The position numbers were made by a program, and so were the translations under genes. Source: Ascidiella aspersa (Eukaryota). Taken from it: a stretch of DNA of 64,000 nt. Under the pieces are notes generated by a model. The model did no database searches. It was not told where the DNA came from and saw only the letters and a program-made list of their open reading frames with translations. Shown here piece by piece: positions 7,511 to 29,900 of the stretch. How positions within the stretch are numbered: the first letter of the stretch is position 1; every line of letters starts with the position of its first letter. The stretch is from assembly GCA_963924565.1 (NCBI GenBank), contig OZ004609.1, positions 26,908,001-26,972,000 on the forward strand. Direction: 5' to 3'.

Positions 7511-8129
7511 AGTTGTGCAAGAGATCAGTGTGCATTATGAATGATTAACGCAATAATTTGTCGAAATAAACAAATTAATTCCACTAGTACGAACTCTCAA
7601 AACTGTTGCATGATTTTATCAAATTTTTTCGTTTATATTGTTCAATTGGGACCAATATAATTTGTTGGTTTTGCAATAGAAGATTACACCTAACTGAAGA
7701 TATGCAAGTGGCAAGTTTGAATTCAATTTCCTTAAAAAGTTAAGTTGCAAAATATGTTGCCAACTTAATAACAAGGAAAATAATTACTTGAAATTTGAAA
7801 ATATACTGTGGTGTGATATTCTTAATGTGTTTTTTTAGATTCAAAACTTATTATTCTAGAATATATACCTTGAGAATTCTCATTTGAATAATGAATATCC
7901 CTGCTATTTACCCAGTACACTTTCCTATTTCAAAAGTACAGTCTTCATCACATACAGTGCTTATGCACTTTAATGAATTCATTATTTAATCTGTTTTATC
8001 TGTCTTTCAAAATAAATGTCAATTATACTAATGGAATTTTAATCTCTTTCTTTTATATAGCTGTTTTATCATGAACTAGAGGTTAACCAAATAAGTTTGC
8101 TACAATTTTCCTTAGTAATTTGGAGCATC

Positions 8130-10547
8130 ATGGCTGGCATTAATGTTCTCGCAAAGGCAGTGTACGACAACTTTGCTGAAACAGGAGATGAGCTGAACTT
8201 TCACCGAGGCGATGTTGTCACAGTTATAGAGCAGAACACTGCTGGGCTTGAAGGCTGGTGGCTCTGTTCGTTTCGGGGGAAACAAGGAATTGCCCCTGGA
8301 AACAGGCTGAAAATTATGGCAGGCATGTATGGCTCAGGTCAAGGTGGAGCAGTTACAGCAGCAGCCCAGGAGCAAGACGTTTATGACGTACCTCCGTCAC
8401 ATTCCTGGAACAGTCCACAAAAGCCATTGTTTGCTGACCAAGAAGAAGAGTACGATGTTCCACGGAGCCAGATGAAAGTCGGCAACAACAATCCGGAGCC
8501 TTACTCGCCCACTGAGATTTATGACGTACCCAGAGCTAGCGCCTGGAAGCAGGGCCATAACAATAACGAAGACCAAGAAGTGTATGACATTCCACCATCT
8601 GCACTTTCTGCCCAACCTATCCAACATACCCATGTTGTAGATGACCAGGACGTTTATAATGTACCAAGTAGTCTCATGGCATTTAACAACACACCGGATC
8701 CCATGGAGCTGTATGATGTACCTCCGCTTGTGTCTCGTGGCCCACAACAGACTGTCTTTCATCCAGAAGAAGTGTATGATGTGCCTCCCAGGAGAATGGA
8801 ACAGGTATCCTCTGATTTAATTGATGTACAACATCCGGAGGAAGTTTATGATATTCCATCGTCCCTTGCTTTCCCTATATCAAAAACAGAAAATATTCGC
8901 TCACCAATAAACAGGCAAGAGTCGAATGAATCTGATGTAGTCTATGATATACCACAGTCCAACAGGGCGCCCGGTAGGCGTTACATACCATCTGGCCTAA
9001 ACAGCCTTAGAAGGATGAAGAGAGAAATCAACGCTTTGTCCACAGCTAGTGCTAGCAATTCCATGCAACCCCAAGCACAGCAAGAGCAACCTGATTACAT
9101 TTATGATGTGCCACCACAAGTAAGCAGAGACTCAAACCACAACCAACAACAACAGGCCAATCCTGATGATGTCGTAGACGGACTACTACGCCGCTTGTCG
9201 ATGAATGAACCTGTAGACAACAGAGCTAATCGTCTCTCCCAGATTTCCAAGGACTCATACAGCAGTTTCATTGATGACAATCCCCTTCAATTCAGTGAAC
9301 TGCAACTTGACTTCAACACTGCACTTGAACAGTTAATTGAGCTCAAACGTCAGTTGGAGGACTCTGTGTCAAGCCTTCTTACAATGGTGAAGAAAAACTG
9401 GAGAAAACGAGAAAGCATATATGGAAAAACAACTGATATTCAGAAGTTATTTTTAGATGTGCTAAAAAGCTTAAATCAGTTTCTTATTTTTGCCAGAGGA
9501 GCAACTGCCAATGCTTGTAATGCTACTAATAACCATTCAGTAGGCAAGGCACCAAAAAATGTGCAGACTGGCCTGAGAAAGTTACTTAATCCAGTTGAAG
9601 AAGATGCAGAAATGCTCAGAAGGGCTTTTTCTGAGTTGGATGCTGCTGAGTGGGATATTGAAAAGTTAGCTCTGGCTGACGATACTGATGATGGAATTGC
9701 CTTAGATGAAATTGACAGTTTTGTAATGACCTCCAGGGCTGTTTCGGACGATGCTGCCCAAATGGCTGTCTACATCCATACTCATGCACAGTACATATTC
9801 ACAAAAGCAAAGGATGTGCAGCGTACATCTTCGCCCCCAGTACAACCTGCCAGCCCTGAGAGACCTATTCAGGAACGAAATGCCCTGCAAGCAAGACCGT
9901 TGCCCTCTGTACCCAATAAAAACGATACCGTAGCCGTGCCTTCCCCAACCACTGTCATGCCTGGTGAGGATGCCTGGCTTGAGGATTACGATTATGTTGC
10001 CTTGGAGGATAAGGATGAATTTGAGCAGAGCACACAGAGTCCCACTTCTGGCAACTTGGCTGGACTAAATAAACGACGAACCCAGCTGCTCGCATTAGAG
10101 AAAGAGCTGTCTCCGAGCATCACCCGACTTGAGGCCGGCAAAATCAGCAGCAAAGAAAAAGAGGCCCTCAATGAACTTGCCATCGACATTCCAGAGTTGA
10201 TGCAAGGCTTGTCAAATGCAATTGAACAGTTCACGAATGCAGTGGAAAAGGGAAACCAGCCGCACACATTTGTTGCTCTGGGCAAGCAAGTTATTTTGTG
10301 TGCCCACAAACTAGTATTTGTGGGGGACTGCGTTCACCAGCAGGTCAGAGTGCAAAGTGTTAAGGACTCCATAAGGGATCACTGCTTTGACATGTGCACT
10401 GCGTTAAAGCACACAGTTGTATCAACCAAACTGGCAGCCCTGCAATGGCCAGCAATACATGCTGTGCAGGACATGGTCGACAAAATATATGACATTGCAA
10501 AGTGCGCTCACAAAATCAGGCTTACCCTTGATCATGTTTTATACTAA
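8130..10547 (+). CDS. BCAR1: p130Cas / Cas-family scaffold (BCAR1/NEDD9-like), 805 aa, intronless CDS
   Basis: N-terminal SH3 (VLAKAVYDN...LEGWWLCSFRGKQGIAPGNRL). Substrate domain with 10 YxxP motifs (6 YDVP, 3 YDIP, 1 YNVP). Helical bundle region, Src-binding RPLPSVP and YDYV motifs, and C-terminal FAT-like domain (GKQVILCAHKLVFVGD). The first ATG is at 8130; the ORF track start at 8097 is a TTG. Acceptor ttttccttag at 8115. Confidence 0.95.
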   Translation: MAGINVLAKAVYDNFAETGDELNFHRGDVVTVIEQNTAGLEGWWLCSFRGKQGIAPGNRLKIMAGMYGSGQGGAVTAAAQEQDVYDVPPSHSWNSPQKPLFADQEEEYDVPRSQMKVGNNNPEPYSPTEIYDVPRASAWKQGHNNNEDQEVYDIPPSALSAQPIQHTHVVDDQDVYNVPSSLMAFNNTPDPMELYDVPPLVSRGPQQTVFHPEEVYDVPPRRMEQVSSDLIDVQHPEEVYDIPSSLAFPISKTENIRSPINRQESNESDVVYDIPQSNRAPGRRYIPSGLNSLRRMKREINALSTASASNSMQPQAQQEQPDYIYDVPPQVSRDSNHNQQQQANPDDVVDGLLRRLSMNEPVDNRANRLSQISKDSYSSFIDDNPLQFSELQLDFNTALEQLIELKRQLEDSVSSLLTMVKKNWRKRESIYGKTTDIQKLFLDVLKSLNQFLIFARGATANACNATNNHSVGKAPKNVQTGLRKLLNPVEEDAEMLRRAFSELDAAEWDIEKLALADDTDDGIALDEIDSFVMTSRAVSDDAAQMAVYIHTHAQYIFTKAKDVQRTSSPPVQPASPERPIQERNALQARPLPSVPNKNDTVAVPSPTTVMPGEDAWLEDYDYVALEDKDEFEQSTQSPTSGNLAGLNKRRTQLLALEKELSPSITRLEAGKISSKEKEALNELAIDIPELMQGLSNAIEQFTNAVEKGNQPHTFVALGKQVILCAHKLVFVGDCVHQQVRVQSVKDSIRDHCFDMCTALKHTVVSTKLAALQWPAIHAVQDMVDKIYDIAKCAHKIRLTLDHVLY

Positions 10548-11938: not shown

Positions 11939-14900
11939 ATGGCAACGTCCAATGGAACTTCAGAAGGCAGTAATAATGACATGGCCAACACTCTTAAAGA
12001 AATGCTGAAAATCAACAGTTCTAGTTCAATTGCAGGTATGTATGCCTTGCCACTTGTTCCATGAACCATGCAAATATAAAAAATAACCCTTTTAAATAAC
12101 AATGTTTTAAAGTTCCTAATATGACCCTTAATTTAAAATGTGACATAACTTCCCCAGCCCGTATATAGTAAATTGTTTTTCACAAAAGCTGAAAAAACTT
12201 GATAGATAAAAATAATAAAATAATGACTTTTTAGCCTCATGTAAGCACCTACAAAAAAGTTTTAGTAATTTTTTTCAGTATTTTAAGGATAAAAAATTTA
12301 GGTTTCAGGCCACTGAGTATTTTATTTATATGGTTTATCCAGTCTTACAAGCACATTTTACACAGTGTTTATTTACGACAAGGTTTGTTGAAGTCAGTTT
12401 GAAGAAGGTGTATCGACCAACAAAATCTTGCTGGCATATTTTTTAATGTTTATGTTACTGTTGTACTTAACTGTCATTGTTTAAACACTGGCAGATGTAT
12501 TAAATATACACACTTGAATCACATATGTTATTTTTGTATGTTGATAGTTGAACAGCACATTCACAATGGAGCTGGCGATGGGCTTCCGTTGACTGCACCA
12601 CCAAACAATGAGGTTTTAACTTTTAATTTAATGAACAACAATCCTATTATGTTTAATAGCTACATATTTTTTAAGAACCTTGCTTGTGATAACATGGTTT
12701 AATGCAAAGTTTATATACTTTTTAGGAACTGGTGGCGGCACAGGAGGAAATGCACAATCACTCCCAAACAGTTGATACAATGTGCCTATTTTGGGTTACT
12801 TGTGTGTCTGATTAATCATGACTAAAAATAATTAATGTATACTCTATTTATTTTAATGGATTATGTTACTCAGCACAGTATTTTGAAAAACTCATTATCA
12901 AAAAAGTGTTAGCTTTTCCTATATTATATACACAGCTTTGTAGCTTGACCCTTAATTCAGTTTTAAAAAATGTTTTACTTTGTCGAATACCTTTTTTACT
13001 TAAAGCAGCCTGAATATAAACTTGTTTTTCAGCTTGTTAAGAGACGTGGAAGATGGAAAATGTGTATTGATCAATAACAAACACACAAGAATTGTAGCAA
13101 GTCCCAGGTCTGAAATTGACAGCACTGTGCCAGCAAGTAACAAGGTACATTTGTCTGCATTTATTTAAATTTAAGGAGTCAAAATGATGTAATGCTAAAC
13201 TTGTTTTCAATCAATTGTGACCTATTTCAAATAATATCACCTTATCATGCCACCTGACCTTGTGCAACATGCCAATCAAGTGTGTATGTATTGTTTAATT
13301 ATGGCAATCTGTATTACCAGCAAATATGATAAACTAGGAGTTATGTCTGTCAGCCCAGGTACTGAGGTACATAACAATTACCTGCCGAAATATATTTGAT
13401 AACAATCATTCTGTTCAGTTACATAACAGATTTTATACTACATAGTCATATTTTTGCATGTTTTAGGCATTGAAATGTAACTTTTTTTTAAATTTGGCAT
13501 CTAAGCTGTTGAGTTAGTTAATTAGTAAGCTAATTTTTAAAAGTTGCTTATGCCAGATGCATGGCAAACGGCCAATTTTTCCAATCATCGTTTATGTAAA
13601 ATCTATCCAGCCAATGTTTATAAGTTTATTGTTTTTTGACAGCATTTTTGTCTCCATTATTTTAGGTAAAGGTAAACACCGTCACCAAGTTTGACTGGGA
13701 CCACAAGTACTACACTGGCAGTCTTATTTCTGTCACAAACACCTACATTGCATACACCATTAAGGGTAGGTATTTAATGCAAAATTTATAAACCAACCGA
13801 AAACGTTATCTCTTTAAAAGATCTCTCTTAGAAGGTAATACACCTAGTCATACAACTATACTTGGTATGAAAGCTGTTTTGATACATGGCAATTAATGGG
13901 TTTGTGTATGCCAAAGGTTTAGTTTCAAGTACTCCACTTCTTTTGTACATAATCGTGTTGTATGCCAAACCTTGTCCTCTATTTGGAGTGCCTAAAAGTA
14001 TTATTCTGAAATCTATCAAATGCTAATGCATCTACTTTTATTGTGTGGTTGGCCATTCTTAAGGTCACACTTCGGTGTTATGTAAAACTTTTGCTTCCAC
14101 CAGAACCCTGTAAATGGTTTAACAGTGGTAATATAGGGTAAAATACCTTCACTGTTTAATTACGTTTTGTTTTGTAACCAACACCAGCTGCCTTTTTTTA
14201 TTTCAGGGTTTTGAGTACATGAACTCTTCACTATACTGTTACAAACATTTTTAAATCTGCAATTTGTTTTATTTTGGTATTATTTAAGGTCATACAGCCC
14301 ATTCAGTTCGAGTCATTAATCGTCACAATTCTTCAAATCGCGTTCTTCTGAAGGGTTTTTCAGGAATTGTATGTGATGTTGCATTTGCATCACCCCGCTC
14401 CAACATTCTGGCCGCTGTTGATTCCGTTGGCAATCTGATTGTATGGGAGCTCACCGATGTTGCCGGAAATATAGAGTATCCTTTTCACTTTTAAGTAGTT
14501 ATGACAGATTCAGTGAGTCTGTGATGGCTTTTCGGTGTACTAATTATACGCAAGCCGTAATCGTTGGTCAAAAAGCAGCTATAGAAGGGCTAAATCACAG
14601 TTGTTAACACACAAATGTGTGTACATGTTGTACAAGTTAGGTTTAATGATGATTATCATGAGTTTTTCTTCAGCATTGTTTTGTTTGTTTTTTAAGACTT
14701 GTGATAAAATATACTTTAGACTATCACATGTGGACTGTAGTTGAATTCTTTGACAAGCGAAATCCCTAAAAAGATCGGAGCGCAAGATTTGCATAGAGTC
14801 TGAATCTACCGTGTCAGATGAATCCGGAACCTTTCGTGTCATCTGGATTCCATTTGTGAACCTCGGAAGCAAAGAAAACAGCCTCGATGGTGAATCTTCA

Positions 14901-17900
14901 TCTTTCCAAGACACCATAGATTCTGCTGACAATGAAACACAAAGGATGCTGGTCCTATCGTATGGCAGGACGGTAAATTAATTTAATTTTAGAGACTAGA
15001 GTTTTAAAGTCGATATACTATTTATGTTAACTGCAATGTGGTAATATTAGTTTGATTCCAAGAACATTGTTTCTTGCTAAAGGATTTTTATCAAAACTTA
15101 CATTTATCATTGGGTTTTAATTTGAACAAAAAAAAAAACTCATAAATTACTCTTTTAATGAAGGCTGAAGTTTGGGACTTAGATGCTGCTTTTCAAATCT
15201 CTGCTGGAAAAAAAGTAAGAAGAGCGGATTTAGGACAAGCTTATGTGGCAGTGACACACGACGATGTAAGTTTATTAAACAAACATATTTTTGATGTTAC
15301 TATAGTTTTTGCAGTGTAAGCATTTTAATCTGAGACAAATCCCATATTTATAAAACAGTCTTTTTAGACATAGTCAACATGTTTTTTGTTTACACTATGG
15401 AAATCTGGGAGAATACAACATGAAAATAAATATTTTTTTAGTACTTTCATATTTCTTAACACTATCTAAATCTAACTGAAACCCTAATGTCGAAAGTACC
15501 AATTATAAATTTGTAAATTTAAATAGTCGCAAGTCATTGCTCTTAAATTTTCTTAAAATAGTACTGTTTCAGTTTGTTGAAAAACCATAACCATAAATTA
15601 AATTTTAACTGTTCGCCAAATTTAAATTTAATTGTCGGCCAATATTTACCCAACTAAACAATTTTTGTCATAAATATATAGTCATTTCAGTCAATCATTT
15701 TGTACGCTTATAGTGAGCAAAACAGAAATAAATTAATAAAATTAAATTTTAGCTATTTAAATTTAACCATTTGAACTGCTTCAGTCGGTGACCCAACCAA
15801 ATCAAACCTCCCATGCTGAAATCCTTTACCGTACTTTGGCGATTGCAACTGATTATTAGTATTATTGCCACGTAAAATCTTTCTCCATACAGATGCAGAC
15901 AGCCTTAAACTGGCACCTATCAATAAACGCCGGCTATTATGCGGCACCCCTTCTTGTTTAGTCTCATACCATCGCAGGCTAAAGTTACAAAATCACGTTT
16001 CCTGGTCCGCTCTAAATAGTTGTGTGCCTCTTGTGAAATCCGACTTACGATTCCCACGAAACGCAGGTGATAAGTGACTGCGAACTGTCCCCGATCGGAA
16101 ACGTTCTGGCGGCTGCCAGCTACGACGGCTACGTCAAGTTCTGGCAAATTCAAATCGAAGACAACCAACCTTCCTCGTGAGTGATAAACGCAGAAAAATA
16201 AAACTGTTTTTTTTTTAAAAAAAAAAGTTTTGTCATTGCGTTTCGTAATTAGAATTTGGTCACATTTTACTAACTTATAAAACACTTTTGGGGACGTTAA
16301 AATCAATTTTGTTTTTCAATAATGTAGTATGCTATGTTATCATTACAACTTGAAATTATACTATACAGCAATATTGTCTTTAACAACTTGAAAACATTGT
16401 ATTCCCGCAAACCTTTATCATTAAAAAAGTTGGTTTATTTTTATTAGAAATGCATTGAATAATTAACCACATTTTGTTTTTTAATACACATTTTTTGTTA
16501 TTTTCATGTTAAATACTTTTAATACCACGGTATGCTGAGATAGCAGTAGCAGCAAATTGACAGCATGTATATTGTGCTCAACAACGTTTCTTAACCTTAC
16601 AGTACCGTGGCACGTCACAAATTGCTATTGCATATACGTAGAAAAATATAAACGAATATCACTAAGATACTAAGCATTTTACAGCACACACGCCTCACAA
16701 TTAATTACGCCTTGTCGGTTAATGGTTGTAAATGATACACCTAATCTTACAGCTCAGGTCAGCGCACTTGCGCACTATACATGGCGCTTAATGTGAACGA
16801 ACGTGCGCTAATTATAAACTCCCATTAACCTAGCATGACATAATTCTCCTGAAACATGTGCTTGTTGTTGGGTTAATTTAACGAGCAATCACGGTTGCCC
16901 GAAGTTGTCTCTTACTCCGCCCGCAACGCAAAACTTTCTTACGCGGCGGACCACTGTTTGCTATATTTGTTGTTGTTGACGTTTTGTGCTTTCTATCAGC
17001 TGCCTTCATAAGTGGAAGCCGCATGACGGAAAGCCGGTTTCCTGCGTCAAGTTTTGTGACAATCGGCAAAAGTCCGAGTTCAGGTATGTTTTTTTTCTTT
17101 ATAGCAGAGGTTCTCAAACTGGGGTGGGTCCGTGTATCCCTTGGGGGTACGTGGACTGCTTTTAGAGGGTCAGTTTTGGGCATACTTAAAATCATGGTTT
17201 TTATTTTTTTTTAAATGGAAATGATTTTTTTAAACTATTCCTTTTCCTTTAATTTGTTTAGACTTTTACATTTTTTTTTGGACCGAAAACAGAGTTCAAG
17301 ATAAAAACAAAATTACTAAGTTAGCATTTTGATGTAATATGAAACGATTAAACAGTGTGTAATGGAGATTAGATCTATTCTGAGCGCAACACATACTAAT
17401 TACAAAACACCCCAAATATCAATACCTTCGTGCCATAAACCGCACTGTTTTAAATAAATGCTCAATTCCAGCGTCTACTGGAGGTTTCTTCTAACGGGAT
17501 GCGACAGGAACAACGAACTTAAGATGTGGTGTTCAGTCACTTGGAATTGTCTTCAGGTGAGTGCGTTCATTTGGAGCTGATTTCAATCATTTTTACGGTT
17601 TTCATGTCTGGCATGTCTGAGGGTATTTCTGTTTCGAAACTGTTGTGTGGCGACCTATAGCCACTCGCCAAATAAAAGGTCGTATCGTGTTTAAACGTAA
17701 GATATTTGGAACGGTATGTTCATGAAGACTTGCAACCAGTTAATTATATAAGTAAGTTGAAATCACGCGGCAAGAATGTTTTTTGAATTTAATGACGTCT
17801 TGAAAAGGCAGAGGTATTATAGTCGTCTCCCTTTTAAACCAAACCTGTTTATCGTGCCATTATTTAAGCCTGTATGTAGAAAAAGTAAGTTAACTGCTTG

Positions 17901-26900: not shown

Positions 26901-29900
26901 CAGCTAAATTCTTTAATGGTTAAAACGCTTTGTTTTTTACATATATCACAGCAAAAAATATTGCTGTAAACTAATGCAAGACACAACGCTTCGATTTTTT
27001 ATATCACAGAGTAAACAGAGTAAAAAAAAACTTTTTATTGCTGTACCGTAAGTGATTGCTCAAATCAGGGCTTCGCAAACTCGGGGTCGCATGCACGGAT
27101 TTGGCAATTTTGGAAGTCTTATATGTCGACCTTTTCTACATTTCAATATGCATTATGTACATGTAAAAACTAATGCAAGACACTTAAACAAATGTGTACG
27201 AAGTTCGATAAACGTTTGATTCACTACTATAAACCTCAAGAAGTTCCACAAAATTAAACCGGCCGTGGGTCGAGAGTTTGAAATGCCCTGTTGTAAGTTA
27301 ACATTTCTTCTCTTAAATCTAGCGATAACTTATTTCACTTTGTTTTCCTTCCAGACCTTGGTCGCCAGTCAACCTCTTTCGTCGCCGGATCCGATTCCGC
27401 TCCTCACTCAACACTCCTCCTCCACCTCTCAGCAGGAGAAGTCGGTTGCTCCTGACGTCACTCGCTCCGTGTCTCCTCCCCAACCACTCCTGCTCACACC
27501 GGACGCCTTTATGGGATCGATGAAGAGCGTGAGTGTTTGTTGTTTGGGTGATTGCGATTAAATTGTGTAAGTGCGTGCCATTGTCACTTGCGTGTGGTTT
27601 ATGTAGTTTAAGCCAGTGATTCGCTACCAGATTTTAATAATGCAACTACAATAATGCAACTGATTGATTTTTTCCTGGTACTGCCGCAATTTTTCGGTCG
27701 TTGGGAGCTACTGTTTGGCAAACTATTTTATTGCTTTTTTTCAGTCAAGTCGAGTAATTATATACTTGAGCCTGATACCGACGTATATTTGACTTAATTT
27801 AATAACAAGAAGTGATGTTATGCTCAAATTTTAACACAGTGCATAGCCTTTAAATAGTGAATCATTCGATTGAGAAAACATGTTCAGCACGTTAAAAAGC
27901 CATATTATTTTTCAAGGTAAAAGTAATTAATCGCCTTTCATTTTAAACCGCCACATGTAGTTTCATGAACTTGTTATAAAAAAAACATTTGCCGTAGTTT
28001 GAATATGTGTTTATTTTTTCCATGTGCTTCCCTCAGCCGGGCAACCTGGTGGAGTCGGCCAACACAAGCTTTACCGCAGTTACGCCGTTCAGCAACCGGG
28101 ACGAGACCTTTTATCAGAACCAGGATCTCCTTTTGGGTTAGTTATCGTGTTTTTGTTTGAACTACGTTTGCCAACAAAATAGGATTGGTTCTGTTGACTA
28201 GGGCTGTGTAACAAGATCAACATACAGCAGGGCATTTTAAGTTTTGCAATTTATATAACGCACCAATGATCAGTGTGATCACTGAGGTCGCTTTTTCTAC
28301 TCTTTTTTTATATTTTTTTTTAACTTACAGAAGCAACGAAAGCATTCCTAGTCATTTCAGTTAAGAACCAACTGCATATATAGATTTTAATCACACATTA
28401 TTTTCTCACCCCTGCCTCGATGCATTGTACTTAATGCATTGTACCCCAATGGTGTACACTGGCCCCTGATTAGTAGTGATACTTAAAAAGCATTCCTTTC
28501 ACCACAAGTATACTATGCAAACAATGTTTGTCGTTAAAGTGCACAATTTACCATAAATACCTATGTGCTTTTAACAACTGTGAACATTTCCCAACTACAG
28601 TTAATCACCGAACTTTCAAGGTGCCAGGAACCGTTAGTAAAAGTGAGGCGGTAGGGTCGAGGCAGCAAACAAGGATTATAAGAACTGATTTAATCTTTAA
28701 AGCATTCTGGCCATGGAAACCCCTATACTGGCCATGGAAAGAATGATTTATCAGTCAATCCCGCGTACAACGTTGTACAAATATATTAGACTAAAGTACA
28801 CCGAAAAGCCATCGCAGACTCACCGAATCTGTCGATCAATGATGCGAGAAGGCAGGCTAGAAAACCAACTAGCCTGTAGTGAGGCTCGAACTCACGACCT
28901 CCAGTCATTCCGGGACCGTCGCACTACCAACTGAGCTACTGTAGGCTAGTTGTTTTTTTAGCCTGCCTGCTTGCTTCATTGATTGACAGATTCGGTGAGT
29001 CTTCGATGGCTTTTCGGTGTAGTAAAGATACGTAAGCCGAAATCGTTGGTCAAAAAGCAGCTAATCACAGTTGTTAACACACATATGTGTGTGTGTGTAT
29101 CTTTCATTGAATATACTAGACCAGTGTTTCTTAAACAGGTGAATGGTTCACCCCAGGGTGAAAATAAATTGCAGGGTGAACCAACCAAAAGGGGTAAATA
29201 AGGGGGAACCGTCAGAAATGGATGATAGCCCTGCAGTAAATCGACTACTGAACTGTTGTTTTTTTGGTGTTTTTTTGCTTATTGTAATAGTAAAGTTGGT
29301 TTGCACTGAGTGTATAAGTACAAAAAATTTGTGACTGTGTTTTGTGCTTTTGTGGCTTTATATTTCTGGACTCGAGAAATTGTAGATTTGCAATGGTAAA
29401 ATATAGCTTGGTTGATCTTAACAAAAATCGAAACAACCGAAGTCATTTTGTGCTTGACGAGATAGTTTTATCATATCATGAGACGAGGGTGAATGAAATC
29501 TGGAGATAAGATGCTAGGGATGAACAAAACTAAAAAAGTTTAAGAAGCACTGTGCTAGACTATTTACACCTTTTATCACCAAACCCATCCAGGTGCCAGA
29601 AACCACCTTCACAACCTGGTTCTCAGCCCTTCCACGATCGGGGGCGAATCGTCGAACCAGGGGGCAAGCAGCAGCCACAACCCTAACCCCAACCCCCCTG
29701 ATGAGGACCCCGTCACCCCTCCCTCGTCCCCGGTGCATCCCCGCGCCTCATCCTCCCCCGGAAGTCAGGCGGAGGTCCCCCACCACAGCATCCGGACTCG
29801 ATCCATTAAGTCTCCTGATCTCATCTCGTCCACTTCGACGCTGGAGGGAGACAAGGAGTCGGGTAGTGGCAACGCGGTCGCGGATCAGGGGACGCCCCCG

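What the first reader, a model, noticed from the sequence alone, without database searches (positions are those of the whole stretch)
28797..29021. tRNA-like cloverleaf crowning a 79-bp hairpin: candidate novel structured RNA or mobile element in EDC4 intron 18
Seen: two ungapped 79-nt arms with 7 mismatches whose inner ends form the acceptor stem of a minus-strand tRNA-like fold. The fold has an intact A box (TAGCTCAGTTGG), B box (GTTCGAGCC), a perfect T-arm, a CCGGAAT anticodon loop and a T4 run just downstream. Established: tRNA-derived SINEs carry the tRNA at their 5' end followed by an unrelated body and tail, and MITEs have TIRs without a central tRNA. This arrangement fits neither. Inference: it may be a repeat family using a tRNA mimic, for example as a Pol III promoter, an RNase P/Z processing signal or a primer mimic. 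Read-through transcription could also yield a long dsRNA stem, a possible Dicer or ADAR substrate, inside the host pre-mRNA.
Basis: partly seen in the sequence, partly recalled or inferred. Interest (0 to 1): 0.78.

Follow-up and report, generated by a model that had tools for sequence, protein, structure and literature searches.

The report
Fold-back copy of tRNA-bearing retroelement
The hairpin topped by a tRNA look-alike is one old, rearranged insertion of an abundant 354-base mobile element of this sea-squirt genome, and its shape is a by-product of how the element inserts, not a purpose-built RNA.

Summary
Arms 28797-28880 and 28938-29021 are 89% complementary, and ARAGORN calls a tRNA-like fold at 28870-28947(-).

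It is not a designed "cloverleaf on a stem". It is one 318-bp insertion (28792-29109) with a 12-bp target-site duplication. It consists of two 5'-truncated copies of a 354-bp unit joined head to head. A 19-nt piece of the unit occurs 1318 times in the genome, against 4 for the control.

- Every hairpin copy has a different central junction.
- Only 3 of 12 other hairpins keep a detectable tRNA at their centre.
- The arms decay without compensation.
- Of 71 sampled loci, 46 are direct, 24 head-to-head and 1 tail-to-tail. Duplications of 10 bp or more flank 44 of 71, against 3 of 213 controls.
- Head-to-head inserts pair one "short" 3' end (about u150) with one "long" end (about u250) in 17 of 24, and never two alike.

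Tandem multi-unit inserts, frequent inverted 5' copies and a one-sided "tail" match Penelope-like element insertions (PMC8557442, PMC3846280). No hammerhead was found, and I could not fetch the partner. The tRNA-like module is conserved between subfamilies (74/75).

Other notes of this scan describe the same family on other DNA.

The parts
28780..28791 (.). left copy of the target-site duplication (aatatattagac)
   Evidence: Read. It matches 29110-29121 at 11 of 12 positions. The family-wide duplication length is 10-15 bp for perfect ones.
28792..28946 (-). 'short-end' arm: unit positions about u155 down to u8/u1, antisense on the + strand. It carries the tRNA-like module and ends at the family's short 3' terminus (..TTTCGGTGTAC)
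   Evidence: BLAST to the 354-nt unit: 28795-28946 = u152->u1, 90.9% identity. Alignment with 12 other hairpin copies and one array unit.
28870..28947 (-). tRNA-like module. It is degenerate, and its 5' acceptor strand is supplied by the other arm
   Evidence: ARAGORN. No Rfam tRNA hit at E<=1, while the consensus copy scores 55 bits. Junction read.
28861..28864 (-). T4 run 6 nt after the tRNA-like module (T5 in the consensus, u81-85)
28938..28946 (.). head-to-head junction. The two copies overlap by 9 nt because the complement of u1-7 is identical to u68-74 (the two acceptor-stem strands)
   Evidence: Overlapping BLAST segments. An extra C/G at the junction is explained only by the sense arm.
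28938..29109 (+). 'long-end' arm: unit positions u66 to u250, sense on the + strand. It includes the 100-nt 'tail' u151-250 and ends ..TTTCATTG
   Evidence: BLAST 28938-29112 = u66->u253, 81.4% identity; alignment.
29110..29121 (.). right copy of the target-site duplication (aatatactagac)
28797..29021 (.). the hairpin as reported (arms 28797-28880 and 28938-29021), which is the part of the two copies that overlaps in unit coordinates

Best explanation
The feature is a single, fairly old retro-insertion of an abundant non-coding element. Its basic unit (U) is 354 bp. It comprises a 75-nt tRNA-like module (u1-75), a T5 run (u81-85), a body, and two alternative 3' termini: a 'short' one at about u150 (..TTTCGGTGTA) and a 'long' one at about u247-253 (..TTTCATTG). 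A spacer follows, which is seen only in multi-unit copies.

Shown: the element inserts with variable 5' truncation and target-site duplications of about 13 bp. It inserts as monomers, as head-to-tail multimers and, in about a third of sampled loci, as two copies joined head to head inside one duplication.

Shown: the window copy is such a head-to-head product. One copy (u1/8 to about u155) lies on the minus strand. The other (u66 to u250) lies on the plus strand. They are joined where the two strands of the tRNA-like acceptor stem give 7-9 nt of complementarity. Both copies contain u76-150, so they form the long stem. The tRNA-like module of one copy sits in the loop.

Inferred: both 3'-OH ends of the staggered target cut primed reverse transcription. 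One primed at the long site of the template RNA and the other at the short site. This resembles twin priming, or the self-priming and template-switching route proposed for Penelope-like elements. The two cDNAs were then joined by microhomology.

Inferred (about 60%): the enzyme is that of a Penelope-like element. The insertion style matches (tandem copies, frequent head-to-head inverted 5'-truncated copy, an extension at only one end), and GIY-YIG-encoding tandem repeats are present in this genome.

The hairpin has no selected function. The tRNA-like module probably does have a role in the life cycle of master copies, such as a Pol III promoter, a processing signal or protein binding. Which role is not shown.
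For: Family and unit:
- The own-genome search found 12 other full-length hairpin copies at 81-85% identity, plus many identical copies of 'tRNA plus one arm' spaced 354 bp apart.
- A 19-nt piece of U occurs 654+664 times at up to 2 mismatches, against 1+3 for the reversed control.

Variable centre:
- In the alignment of 13 hairpins plus an array unit, every copy has a different junction. It lies inside the tRNA, at its 5' end, or up to about 30 nt upstream.
- ARAGORN finds a tRNA at the hairpin centre in only 3 of 12 other hairpins: L006, L008 and L009.

Insertion signature in 71 distinct loci, sampled around the first 100 exact pattern sites:
- 46 are direct, 24 head-to-head and 1 tail-to-tail.
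- A duplication of 10 bp or more flanks 44 of 71, against 3 of 213 shifted-boundary controls (Fisher 3e-29).
- The 30 perfect duplications are 10-15 bp long, with a mode of 13.
- 19 of the 24 head-to-head composites lie inside one duplication of 10 bp or more.
- 3' ends cluster at u149-157 and u247-253, while 5' ends are scattered.
- Inserts reach 1691 and 2725 bp (4 and 7 units) inside perfect 13- and 14-bp duplications (L077, L078).

End rule:
- Head-to-head composites have one short and one long end in 17 of 24, and short plus another end in 7.
- Short+short and long+long both occur 0 times, although direct inserts use the two ends 21:19. The probability of 17 of 17 is about 7e-6.

No selection on the stem:
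- The window copy has 7 one-arm differences and 0 private two-arm changes.
- All 13 hairpins together have 97 one-arm differences against 2 private two-arm changes.

Match to Penelope-like elements:
- Passages of PMC8557442 and PMC3846280 describe partial tandems and a frequent inverted 5'-truncated copy at the 5' end. They also describe mostly head-to-head junctions with palindromes or short overlaps, a 'tail' at the 3' end of only one of the inverted repeats, and short duplications.
- PMC8557442 states that the tandem/inverted structures and the tail are not seen in LINE insertions.
- PF01541 (GIY-YIG) gives 25 hits in this genome. These include four copies spaced 3422 bp apart with an inverted neighbour.

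tRNA-like constraint:
- Subfamily A against U is identical at 74/75 positions in the tRNA-like module, 68/75 in u76-150, 80/100 in the tail and 81/104 in the spacer. Fisher p is 5.8e-5 for tRNA against the rest, but only 0.063 against u76-150 alone.
Against: - The autonomous partner was not identified. No shared 3' end with a Penelope-like element is shown, so a LINE remains possible.
- No hammerhead or other known ribozyme is in the unit (Rfam at E<=10; no CUGANGA core on either strand). Canonical Penelope-like repeats and animal retrozymes usually carry one.
- The 'tail' here is about 100 nt, against 30-40 nt in the papers. The duplications of about 13 bp are longer than the 8-10 bp in the rotifer examples.
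- The sample of 71 loci is biased towards young copies. All of them contain an exact 19-mer at u131-149, and they come from contigs C1 to early C5 only.
- Loci were mapped with my own k-mer script, not a curated aligner.
- No RNA data exist for the element, so the template RNA, its ends and both priming sites are inferred.
- The window locus was not confirmed in independent reads.
Confidence: 0.8

Rival explanations
1. It is an ordinary LINE-mobilised tRNA-derived SINE whose copy here underwent classical twin priming (a 5' inversion).
For: There is variable 5' truncation, variable-length duplications of 10-17 bp, defined 3' ends and head-to-head inversions. LINE reverse-transcriptase ORFs exist in the genome (L079). 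Some composites look like textbook twin priming with no loss at the junction, for example L098: u186..u150 inverted next to u153..u247.
Against: 5' ends show no peak at the tRNA start: 3 of 135 segment 5' ends fall at u350-354 and none at u1-8. A T5 terminator lies 6 nt after the tRNA-like module. Inserts include the sequence upstream of the tRNA and up to 7 tandem units inside one duplication. Inversions are in 24 of 71 loci and obey a strict short+long end rule. PMC8557442 (passage) says tandem/inverted structures and a one-sided tail are not observed in LINE insertions.
Confidence: 0.15
2. It is a DNA-level element: a MITE or foldback transposon with terminal inverted repeats, whose palindrome centre is eroded differently in each copy.
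For: There are long inverted arms with a duplication at the ends. Long palindromes are known to suffer central deletions (recalled, not from a call).
Against: Most copies (46 of 71) have no inverted arm at all and are 5'-truncated direct copies. The two ends of hairpin copies are not inverted repeats of each other: one arm stops at about u150 and the other at about u250. Duplication length varies from 10 to 17 bp. Insertions as short as about 20 nt keep the same 3' end and a duplication (L046). Multi-unit arrays lie inside one duplication.
Confidence: 0.02
3. It is a purpose-built structured RNA (a tRNA mimic on a long stem) with a function of its own, such as a Pol III unit, an RNase P/Z substrate or a dsRNA source in the EDC4 pre-mRNA.
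For: The fold is very stable. A and B boxes and a T run are present. The family's tRNA-like module is conserved between subfamilies.
Against: The junction differs in every copy, and 9 of 12 other hairpins have no detectable tRNA at the centre. The arms accumulate uncompensated changes. The window's tRNA-like fold fails Rfam at E<=1. Its acceptor stem is a chimera of the two arms.
Confidence: 0.02
4. It is an assembly artefact: a palindrome created by mis-joining reads of a repeat.
For: Papers on Penelope-like elements warn that such structures trouble assemblies (PMC8557442 passage). One search gave no contig spanning the locus.
Against: The arms differ at about 11% of positions, and each carries its own changes. 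The whole composite sits inside a matching 12-bp duplication. The same architecture recurs at 12 further hairpin loci and at 24 of the 71 loci sampled. One 112-nt contig of run X2 matches 28945-29056 without a difference.
Confidence: 0.01

Closest known systems
Non-autonomous derivatives of Penelope-like elements (PLEs), and PLE insertion architecture in general (pseudo-LTR tandems with an inverted 5'-truncated copy and a one-sided 'tail')
   Same: Both show head-to-tail multi-unit insertions, frequent head-to-head inverted 5'-truncated copies and short overlaps at the inverted junction. Both carry an extension at the 3' end of only one of the two inverted copies, show 5' truncation and are flanked by target-site duplications (my against passages of PMC8557442 and PMC3846280). 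Multi-copy GIY-YIG-encoding tandem/inverted repeats are present in the genome.
   Different: No sequence link to an autonomous PLE was shown. The extension is about 100 nt, not 30-40 nt. The duplications are about 13 bp. The unit carries a tRNA-like module, which the passages I read do not mention for PLE derivatives.
Animal non-LTR retrozymes (tandem units of a few hundred bp with type I hammerhead ribozymes, thought to be PLE-mobilised; PMC7229834 passages; abstract of bioRxiv 10.64898/2026.07.22.740005)
   Same: Both are small non-coding units, of similar size (constructs named Ax353 and Mg353 in PMC7229834, against 354 bp here). Both occur as tandem arrays and dispersed monomers, have duplications longer than 4 bp and are proposed to depend on PLEs.
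   Different: No hammerhead or other Rfam ribozyme is found at E<=10, and there is no CUGANGA core. A tRNA-like module is present instead. Circular RNA was not tested.
tRNA-derived SINEs
   Same: Both are short, non-coding and retro-inserted. Both contain a tRNA-like sequence with A and B boxes, show 5' truncation and have duplications.
   Different: The tRNA-like module is internal, not the 5' head. A T5 run follows it directly. Multi-unit inserts and inserts that start upstream of the tRNA are common. There is no A-rich or microsatellite tail.
L1 twin-priming 5' inversions
   Same: In both, an inverted 5' part and a direct 3' part lie inside one duplication, joined by microhomology. Some copies show no loss at the junction (L098).
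   Different: Here the second priming site is fixed (about u150) instead of variable. The frequency is about one in three for a 354-nt element. The two parts often copy the same stretch of the template, which is what makes hairpins.
TRIMp3 elements (Helenus, Ajax, Cassandra): non-autonomous LTR retrotransposons carrying tRNA- or 5S-like Pol III promoter sequences (PMC10886601, passages)
   Same: Both are non-autonomous retroelements, not classical SINEs, that carry a small-RNA-gene-like module inside a repeated part. Tandem arrays are noted for some.
   Different: Those have LTRs, a primer-binding site, a polypurine tract and 4-5 bp duplications. None of these is present here.

Membership tests
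tRNA-derived SINE | The tRNA-related head forms the 5' end of the element (Pol III transcript start) | tested here: not met
   Segment 5' ends are scattered over the whole unit. 3 of 135 fall at u350-354 and none at u1-8. Copies that start upstream of the tRNA, and multi-unit copies, are common.
tRNA-derived SINE | The whole element can be transcribed from the internal Pol III promoter (no early terminator) | tested here: not met
   A T5 run lies at u81-85, 6 nt after the tRNA-like module. The window copy has T4 there.
tRNA-derived SINE | The 3' end is shared with a partner LINE, or is an A-rich or simple-repeat tail | tested here: inconclusive
   No A-rich or repeat tail; the ends are ..TTTCGGTGTA and ..TTTCATTG. 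No partner was searched successfully.
MITE / foldback DNA transposon | Terminal inverted repeats at both ends, a constant internal sequence and a fixed-length duplication | tested here: not met
   The outer ends are different unit positions (about u150 and about u250). 46 of 71 loci have no inverted part. The centre is variable. Duplications are 10-17 bp.
Penelope-like element, non-autonomous derivative | Partial or multiple head-to-tail tandem copies inserted as one unit | tested here: met
   26 of 71 inserts are longer than one unit. L077 (1691 bp) and L078 (2725 bp) lie inside perfect 13- and 14-bp duplications.
Penelope-like element, non-autonomous derivative | A frequent inverted 5'-truncated copy at the 5' end, in head-to-head arrangement | tested here: met
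   24 head-to-head against 1 tail-to-tail among 71 loci. 19 of the 24 lie inside one duplication of 10 bp or more.
Penelope-like element, non-autonomous derivative | An extension ('tail') at the 3' end of only one of the inverted copies | tested here: met
   17 of 24 composites have one about-u150 end and one about-u250 end. Both ends alike occurs 0 times. The length (about 100 nt) differs from the published 30-40 nt.
Penelope-like element, non-autonomous derivative | Sequence similarity to an autonomous RT + GIY-YIG element, usually at the 3' end | not tested
   GIY-YIG hits exist in the genome, but their DNA could not be fetched.
Animal non-LTR retrozyme | A hammerhead ribozyme in each unit | tested here: not met
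   Rfam scan of three array units at E<=10 found only tRNA and chance-level hits. No CUGANGA core occurs on either strand of a unit dimer.
Animal non-LTR retrozyme | Unit-length circular RNA | not testable with these tools
   No RNA run holds the unit.
Functional tRNA gene | A canonical cloverleaf with a 7-nt anticodon loop and U33 | tested here: not met
   The consensus loop is CCGGCTT, with C at position 33 and an extra nucleotide before the anticodon stem. Rfam aligns 8 nt where the model has 6. The window copy has no Rfam hit at E<=1.

The most novel reading that the evidence does not exclude
The family may be a ribozyme-less counterpart of animal retrozymes. That would be a small tandem-capable element mobilised by a Penelope-like reverse transcriptase, in which a conserved tRNA-like module replaces the hammerhead, as a processing signal for RNase P/Z, a Pol III promoter or an RT-binding fold. 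Its strict 'one short end plus one long end' rule would then expose the geometry of Penelope-type integration. The two DNA ends of one staggered cut would prime at two fixed sites 100 nt apart on the template, which is a directly testable model for how such elements make their inverted repeats and one-sided tails.
Probability: 0.25. Interest if true: 0.65.

Novelty: new variant of a known kind. Interest (0 to 1): 0.4.

Why it matters
For this locus, little: it is a decaying insertion in an intron, and its striking fold is accidental.

For the family, more. It is young, because identical copies with perfect duplications exist. It is abundant, with more than 1300 copies of one 19-mer. It is short enough that complete insertion products can be read end to end.

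That makes it a convenient natural record of an insertion mechanism that is still not understood for Penelope-like elements. The unexplained features are tandem copies, head-to-head inversions and the one-sided tail.

The short+long end rule and the junction microhomologies are quantitative constraints on any model. The conserved tRNA-like module in an element that is not a SINE also raises a question: do host tRNA-processing or Pol III factors serve the element the way hammerheads serve retrozymes?

There is a practical side too. Such copies inflate tRNA gene predictions and create intronic long-stem RNAs.

Tried and rejected
1. Rfam on the window copy gave no tRNA and no other family near the hairpin; only a chance snoRNA-like hit at 29730-29795.

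2. Ribozyme search on array units and a regex for the hammerhead core found nothing.

3. Looking for the autonomous partner failed.
- The GIY-YIG family search gave places only, and the DNA could not be fetched.
- ORFs of 150 aa or more in everything I held showed only a LINE RT fragment in L079, into which a unit had inserted. That is not a partner.
- L046, which matched only 20 nt, turned out to be an extremely 5'-truncated insertion, not a partner's 3' end.

4. RNA evidence was not available. No run on record as RNA holds the unit.

5. Reads on the window locus returned only short repeat-derived contigs. The unique left flank was uncovered in all 4 runs, so this gives neither confirmation nor an empty site.

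6. Pfam on 10 ORFs around the finding gave 0 families. The EDC4 context was then checked with PF16529. The intron number was not checked.

7. I looked for a 5'-end peak at the tRNA start or just after it, as RNase P/Z-processed templates would give, and saw none.

8. The similarity of the two 3'-end motifs (TTTCGGTGTA and TTTCATTGTA) was considered as a shared recognition site. The commonest long end (u247) does not line up with the short end in that motif, so I do not rely on it.

9. Literature searches found no description of a tRNA-like-bearing, Penelope-type non-autonomous element in tunicates:
- Penelope-like, non-autonomous, tRNA, SINE.
- ascidian, SINE, tRNA-derived, retrotransposon.
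- 'mobilized by Penelope' (0 papers).
- Penelope-like, tunicate, Ciona, pLTR.
- ascidian, Penelope, transposable elements, SINE, genome assembly.
Repbase and Dfam could not be queried, and supplementary files, where TE libraries usually sit, were closed. 'Not in print' is therefore weak.
Full report
OBSERVATION. The reported feature is present. The repeat finder gives inverted arms at 28797-28880 and 28938-29021: 84 nt, 89% complementary, 57 nt apart. ARAGORN finds exactly one tRNA-like gene in the 64-kb window, at 28870-28947 on the minus strand. The minus strand of 28790-29030 folds into one long stem at -138.4 kcal/mol, z = -15.7, with 0 of 200 shuffles as good. The A box, B box, T arm, CCGGAAT loop and T4 run can all be read. 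However, Rfam gives no tRNA hit for this copy even at E<=1.

A REPEAT FAMILY WITH A SIMPLER BASIC UNIT. Searching the window's own genome (308.6 Mb, window = contig C3:26908001-26972000) with the 225-nt feature gave two kinds of hit.
- About a dozen full-length matches at 81-85% identity.
- Many mutually identical matches to only 'left arm plus tRNA' (query 1-151, 91%), often spaced exactly 354 bp apart.

Reading one array shows a 354-bp unit, called U here, with u1 as the first base of the tRNA-like module. Its parts are:
- a 75-nt tRNA-like sequence that scores 55 bits on Rfam's tRNA model but has an irregular anticodon loop, CCGGCTT;
- a T5 run at u81-85;
- a body and a spacer.

There are no inverted arms in the unit. 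A 19-nt piece of it occurs 654+664 times in the genome at up to 2 mismatches, against 1+3 for the reversed control.

THE HAIRPIN COPIES ARE INDIVIDUALLY DIFFERENT FOLD-BACKS. I aligned the window copy, the 12 other full-length hits and one array unit, each with 200 nt of flank.
- In every copy the two arms meet at a different place: inside the T arm, the anticodon arm or the D arm, at the tRNA 5' end, or up to about 30 nt upstream of it.
- ARAGORN finds a tRNA at the hairpin centre in only 3 of the 12 other copies: L006, L008 and L009.
- By eye in that alignment, one arm stops at ..GGTGTAC and the other runs on to ..TTTCATTG, except where an arm continues into an array.
- Flanks carry direct repeats of about 13 bp.

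Young solitary copies show the plain forms.
- L029 is a direct copy from the tRNA start to ..TTTCATT inside a duplication of 12-15 bp.
- L016 starts 20 nt upstream of the tRNA.
- L017 is 1.5 units and ends at ..GGTGTA.
- L014 is a perfect head-to-head pair inside a 13-bp duplication.

THE WINDOW COPY IN UNIT COORDINATES. BLAST against U gives 28795-28946 = u152 down to u1 (antisense on the + strand, 90.9%) and 28938-29112 = u66 up to u253 (sense on the + strand, 81.4%). The two segments overlap by 9 nt. This happens because the complement of the 5' acceptor strand (u1-7) is identical to the 3' acceptor strand (u68-74).

An extra base at the junction fits only the sense arm. So the minus-strand 'tRNA' borrows its 5' acceptor strand from the complement of the other arm. 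That explains why the arms' inner ends seem to form the acceptor stem. It also explains why the fold is irregular.

The insertion is about 28792-29109. It is flanked by aatatattagac (28780-28791) and aatatactagac (29110-29121), which agree at 11 of 12 positions. The arms differ at about 11% of positions, so the insertion is not recent.

FAMILY-WIDE INSERTION SIGNATURE. I fetched the 75 loci that hold the first 100 exact matches of the 19-mer, on contigs C1 to early C5. I mapped them to U with a k-mer script and end extension. I dropped 4 loci as segmental duplicates of others (L074, L075, L076, L102), which leaves 71. The results are:
- 46 loci are direct, 24 head-to-head and 1 tail-to-tail.
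- A flanking direct repeat of 10 bp or more (at most 1 mismatch) is found at 44 of 71 loci, against 3 of 213 when the boundaries are shifted by 30, 45 or 60 bp (Fisher 3e-29).
- The 30 perfect duplications measure 10-15 bp, with a mode of 13.
- 19 of the 24 head-to-head composites lie inside one such duplication, so each is a single event.
- 3' ends pile up at u149-157 and u247-253, with smaller piles at u215 and u232 that seem to belong to a variant. 5' ends are spread over the whole unit with no peak at the tRNA start.
- 26 of 71 inserts exceed one unit. L077 (1691 bp) and L078 (2725 bp) are arrays with an inverted 5' piece inside perfect 13- and 14-bp duplications.
- An insert of only about 20 nt (L046) still ends at the short terminus and has an 11-bp duplication with 1 mismatch.

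These features are those of target-primed reverse transcription with 5' truncation. They are not those of a cut-and-paste element.

AN END RULE. Direct inserts use the short and the long 3' terminus about equally: 21 short, 19 long and 6 other. Head-to-head composites have one of each in 17 of 24, short plus another position in 7, and never short+short or long+long. If the ends were chosen independently, the chance of 17 of 17 is about 7e-6.

Junctions show overlaps of 0 to about 16 nt. In several composites the long-end copy is confined to u151-250, for example L098, L045, L093, L063 and L037. In those the two parts do not overlap in unit coordinates and no hairpin forms. Where the long-end copy runs past u150 into the tRNA region, as in the window, a long stem results.

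NO SELECTION ON THE STEM. Over u76-150 the window copy has 7 positions changed on one arm only. It has 3 positions changed on both arms, and all three are variants shared with other copies. It has 0 private two-arm changes. Over all 13 hairpins there are 97 one-arm differences and 2 private two-arm changes, both in L013. Part of the L006 and L009 count comes from non-homologous junction sequence. L002, L003 and L011 have identical arms over this stretch, so the process has been active recently.

WHAT DRIVES IT. The unit fails the definition of a SINE. The tRNA-like module is internal, a terminator follows it directly, and multi-unit inserts and inserts starting upstream are common. It also fails that of a retrozyme: no hammerhead at E<=10 and no CUGANGA core.

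Its insertion style matches what is described for Penelope-like elements.
- Passages of PMC8557442 describe 5' truncation, partial tandems and 'often' an inverted 5'-truncated copy at the 5' end. [quoted passage not shown] They note that head-to-head is the most frequent arrangement, report duplications of 8-10 bp, and describe mobilisation in trans of sequences flanked by pseudo-LTRs.

The genome holds 25 GIY-YIG matches over Pfam's cut-off. They include four spaced 3422 bp apart with an inverted neighbour, and inverted pairs elsewhere.

The link between unit and enzyme therefore rests on architecture only. I put it at about 60%, and a LINE at about 15-20%.

How the two ends are made is inferred. 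The candidates are both target 3'-OH ends priming at two fixed sites of one (possibly multi-unit) RNA, or self-priming with template switching as proposed in PMC3846280.

IS THE tRNA MIMIC USED? Between two subfamilies (U, and a 346-bp unit at L009:1584-1929) the identities are as follows:
- tRNA-like module 74 of 75, with the only change at the discriminator;
- u76-150, 68 of 75;
- tail, 80 of 100;
- spacer, 81 of 104.

Fisher p is 5.8e-5 for tRNA against the rest, but only 0.063 against u76-150 alone. This points to purifying selection on the module in master copies. Which role it plays is open: Pol III promoter, RNase P/Z signal or protein binding. The scattered 5' ends give no support to templates cut at the tRNA borders.

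CHECKS THAT GAVE NOTHING.
- No run on record as RNA holds the unit.
- Contigs of four runs laid on 28400-29500 covered only repeat-derived parts and left 28400-28770 empty. One 112-nt contig of X2 matched 28945-29056 without a difference.
- Pfam found nothing in 10 nearby ORFs.
- Ge1_WD40 exons at window 13666-17592 (+) place the finding downstream within or near the EDC4 gene, with the tRNA-like module antisense to it.

EARLIER NOTES OF THIS SCAN. Several first-stage notes and one follow-up on other pieces of this genome describe the same family. One example is 'tRNA-bearing Penelope-style retroelement, fold-back copy'. The follow-up note on s1-790857 says the genome is a sea squirt's. I used these notes as leads. 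The Penelope lead came from them. The tests reported here are my own.

LITERATURE. My five searches found no paper describing a tRNA-like-bearing Penelope-type non-autonomous element in tunicates. Dfam and Repbase could not be queried and supplements were closed, so this is weak evidence of novelty.

VERDICT. The interpretation as a purpose-built structured RNA or a new hairpin-type mobile element is not supported. The locus is an ordinary, decaying fold-back copy of an unusual and interesting retroelement family.

Noticed in passing
window 29120-29500: The stretch just right of the insertion is itself covered at very high summed depth by short contigs of runs X2 and X8, with many joints. It looks like another repeat family next to this one.
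   Followed up: no
G000 contig C2:30628752-30640503 (places only): Four GIY-YIG matches are spaced exactly 3422 bp apart on one strand, with a fifth on the other strand 1.2 kb further on. This is the tandem-plus-inverted layout typical of Penelope-like elements. A second GIY-YIG family (255-nt hits) is dispersed on C1 and C7.
   Followed up: partly
L087 (G000 C4:19924051-19926651), also L035, L059, L083, L084: A variant of the unit forms an array of about 348 bp period in which u285..u215 is kept and the stretch between is replaced by other sequence. It gives recurrent ends at u215 and u285.
   Followed up: no
L072/L074 and L073/L075/L076 (G000 C3:24.83-25.06 Mb): The same insertions, with the same structure and the same flanking repeat, recur two and three times within 230 kb. 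This indicates a local segmental duplication after insertion.
   Followed up: no
L079 3-1293 (+): Two adjacent ORFs of about 200 aa look like a LINE reverse transcriptase, judged by eye from the translation. A 581-bp copy of the unit has inserted into them with a 13-bp duplication.
   Followed up: no
L046 about 1296-1320: An insertion of only about 20 nt of the unit keeps the short 3' terminus and has an 11-bp flanking repeat with 1 mismatch. This shows that the short terminus is a true priming end.
   Followed up: yes
window 28571-28583 and 29065-29077; window 28704-28719 and 28725-28740: A perfect 13-nt inverted repeat links the left flank with the tail of the long arm. A 16-nt near-perfect direct repeat sits 21 nt apart in the left flank. 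Either may be chance.
   Followed up: no
window 8061-10544 (+): An 828-aa open frame is the longest in the window. Its start reads like an SH3-domain protein, by eye only.
   Followed up: no
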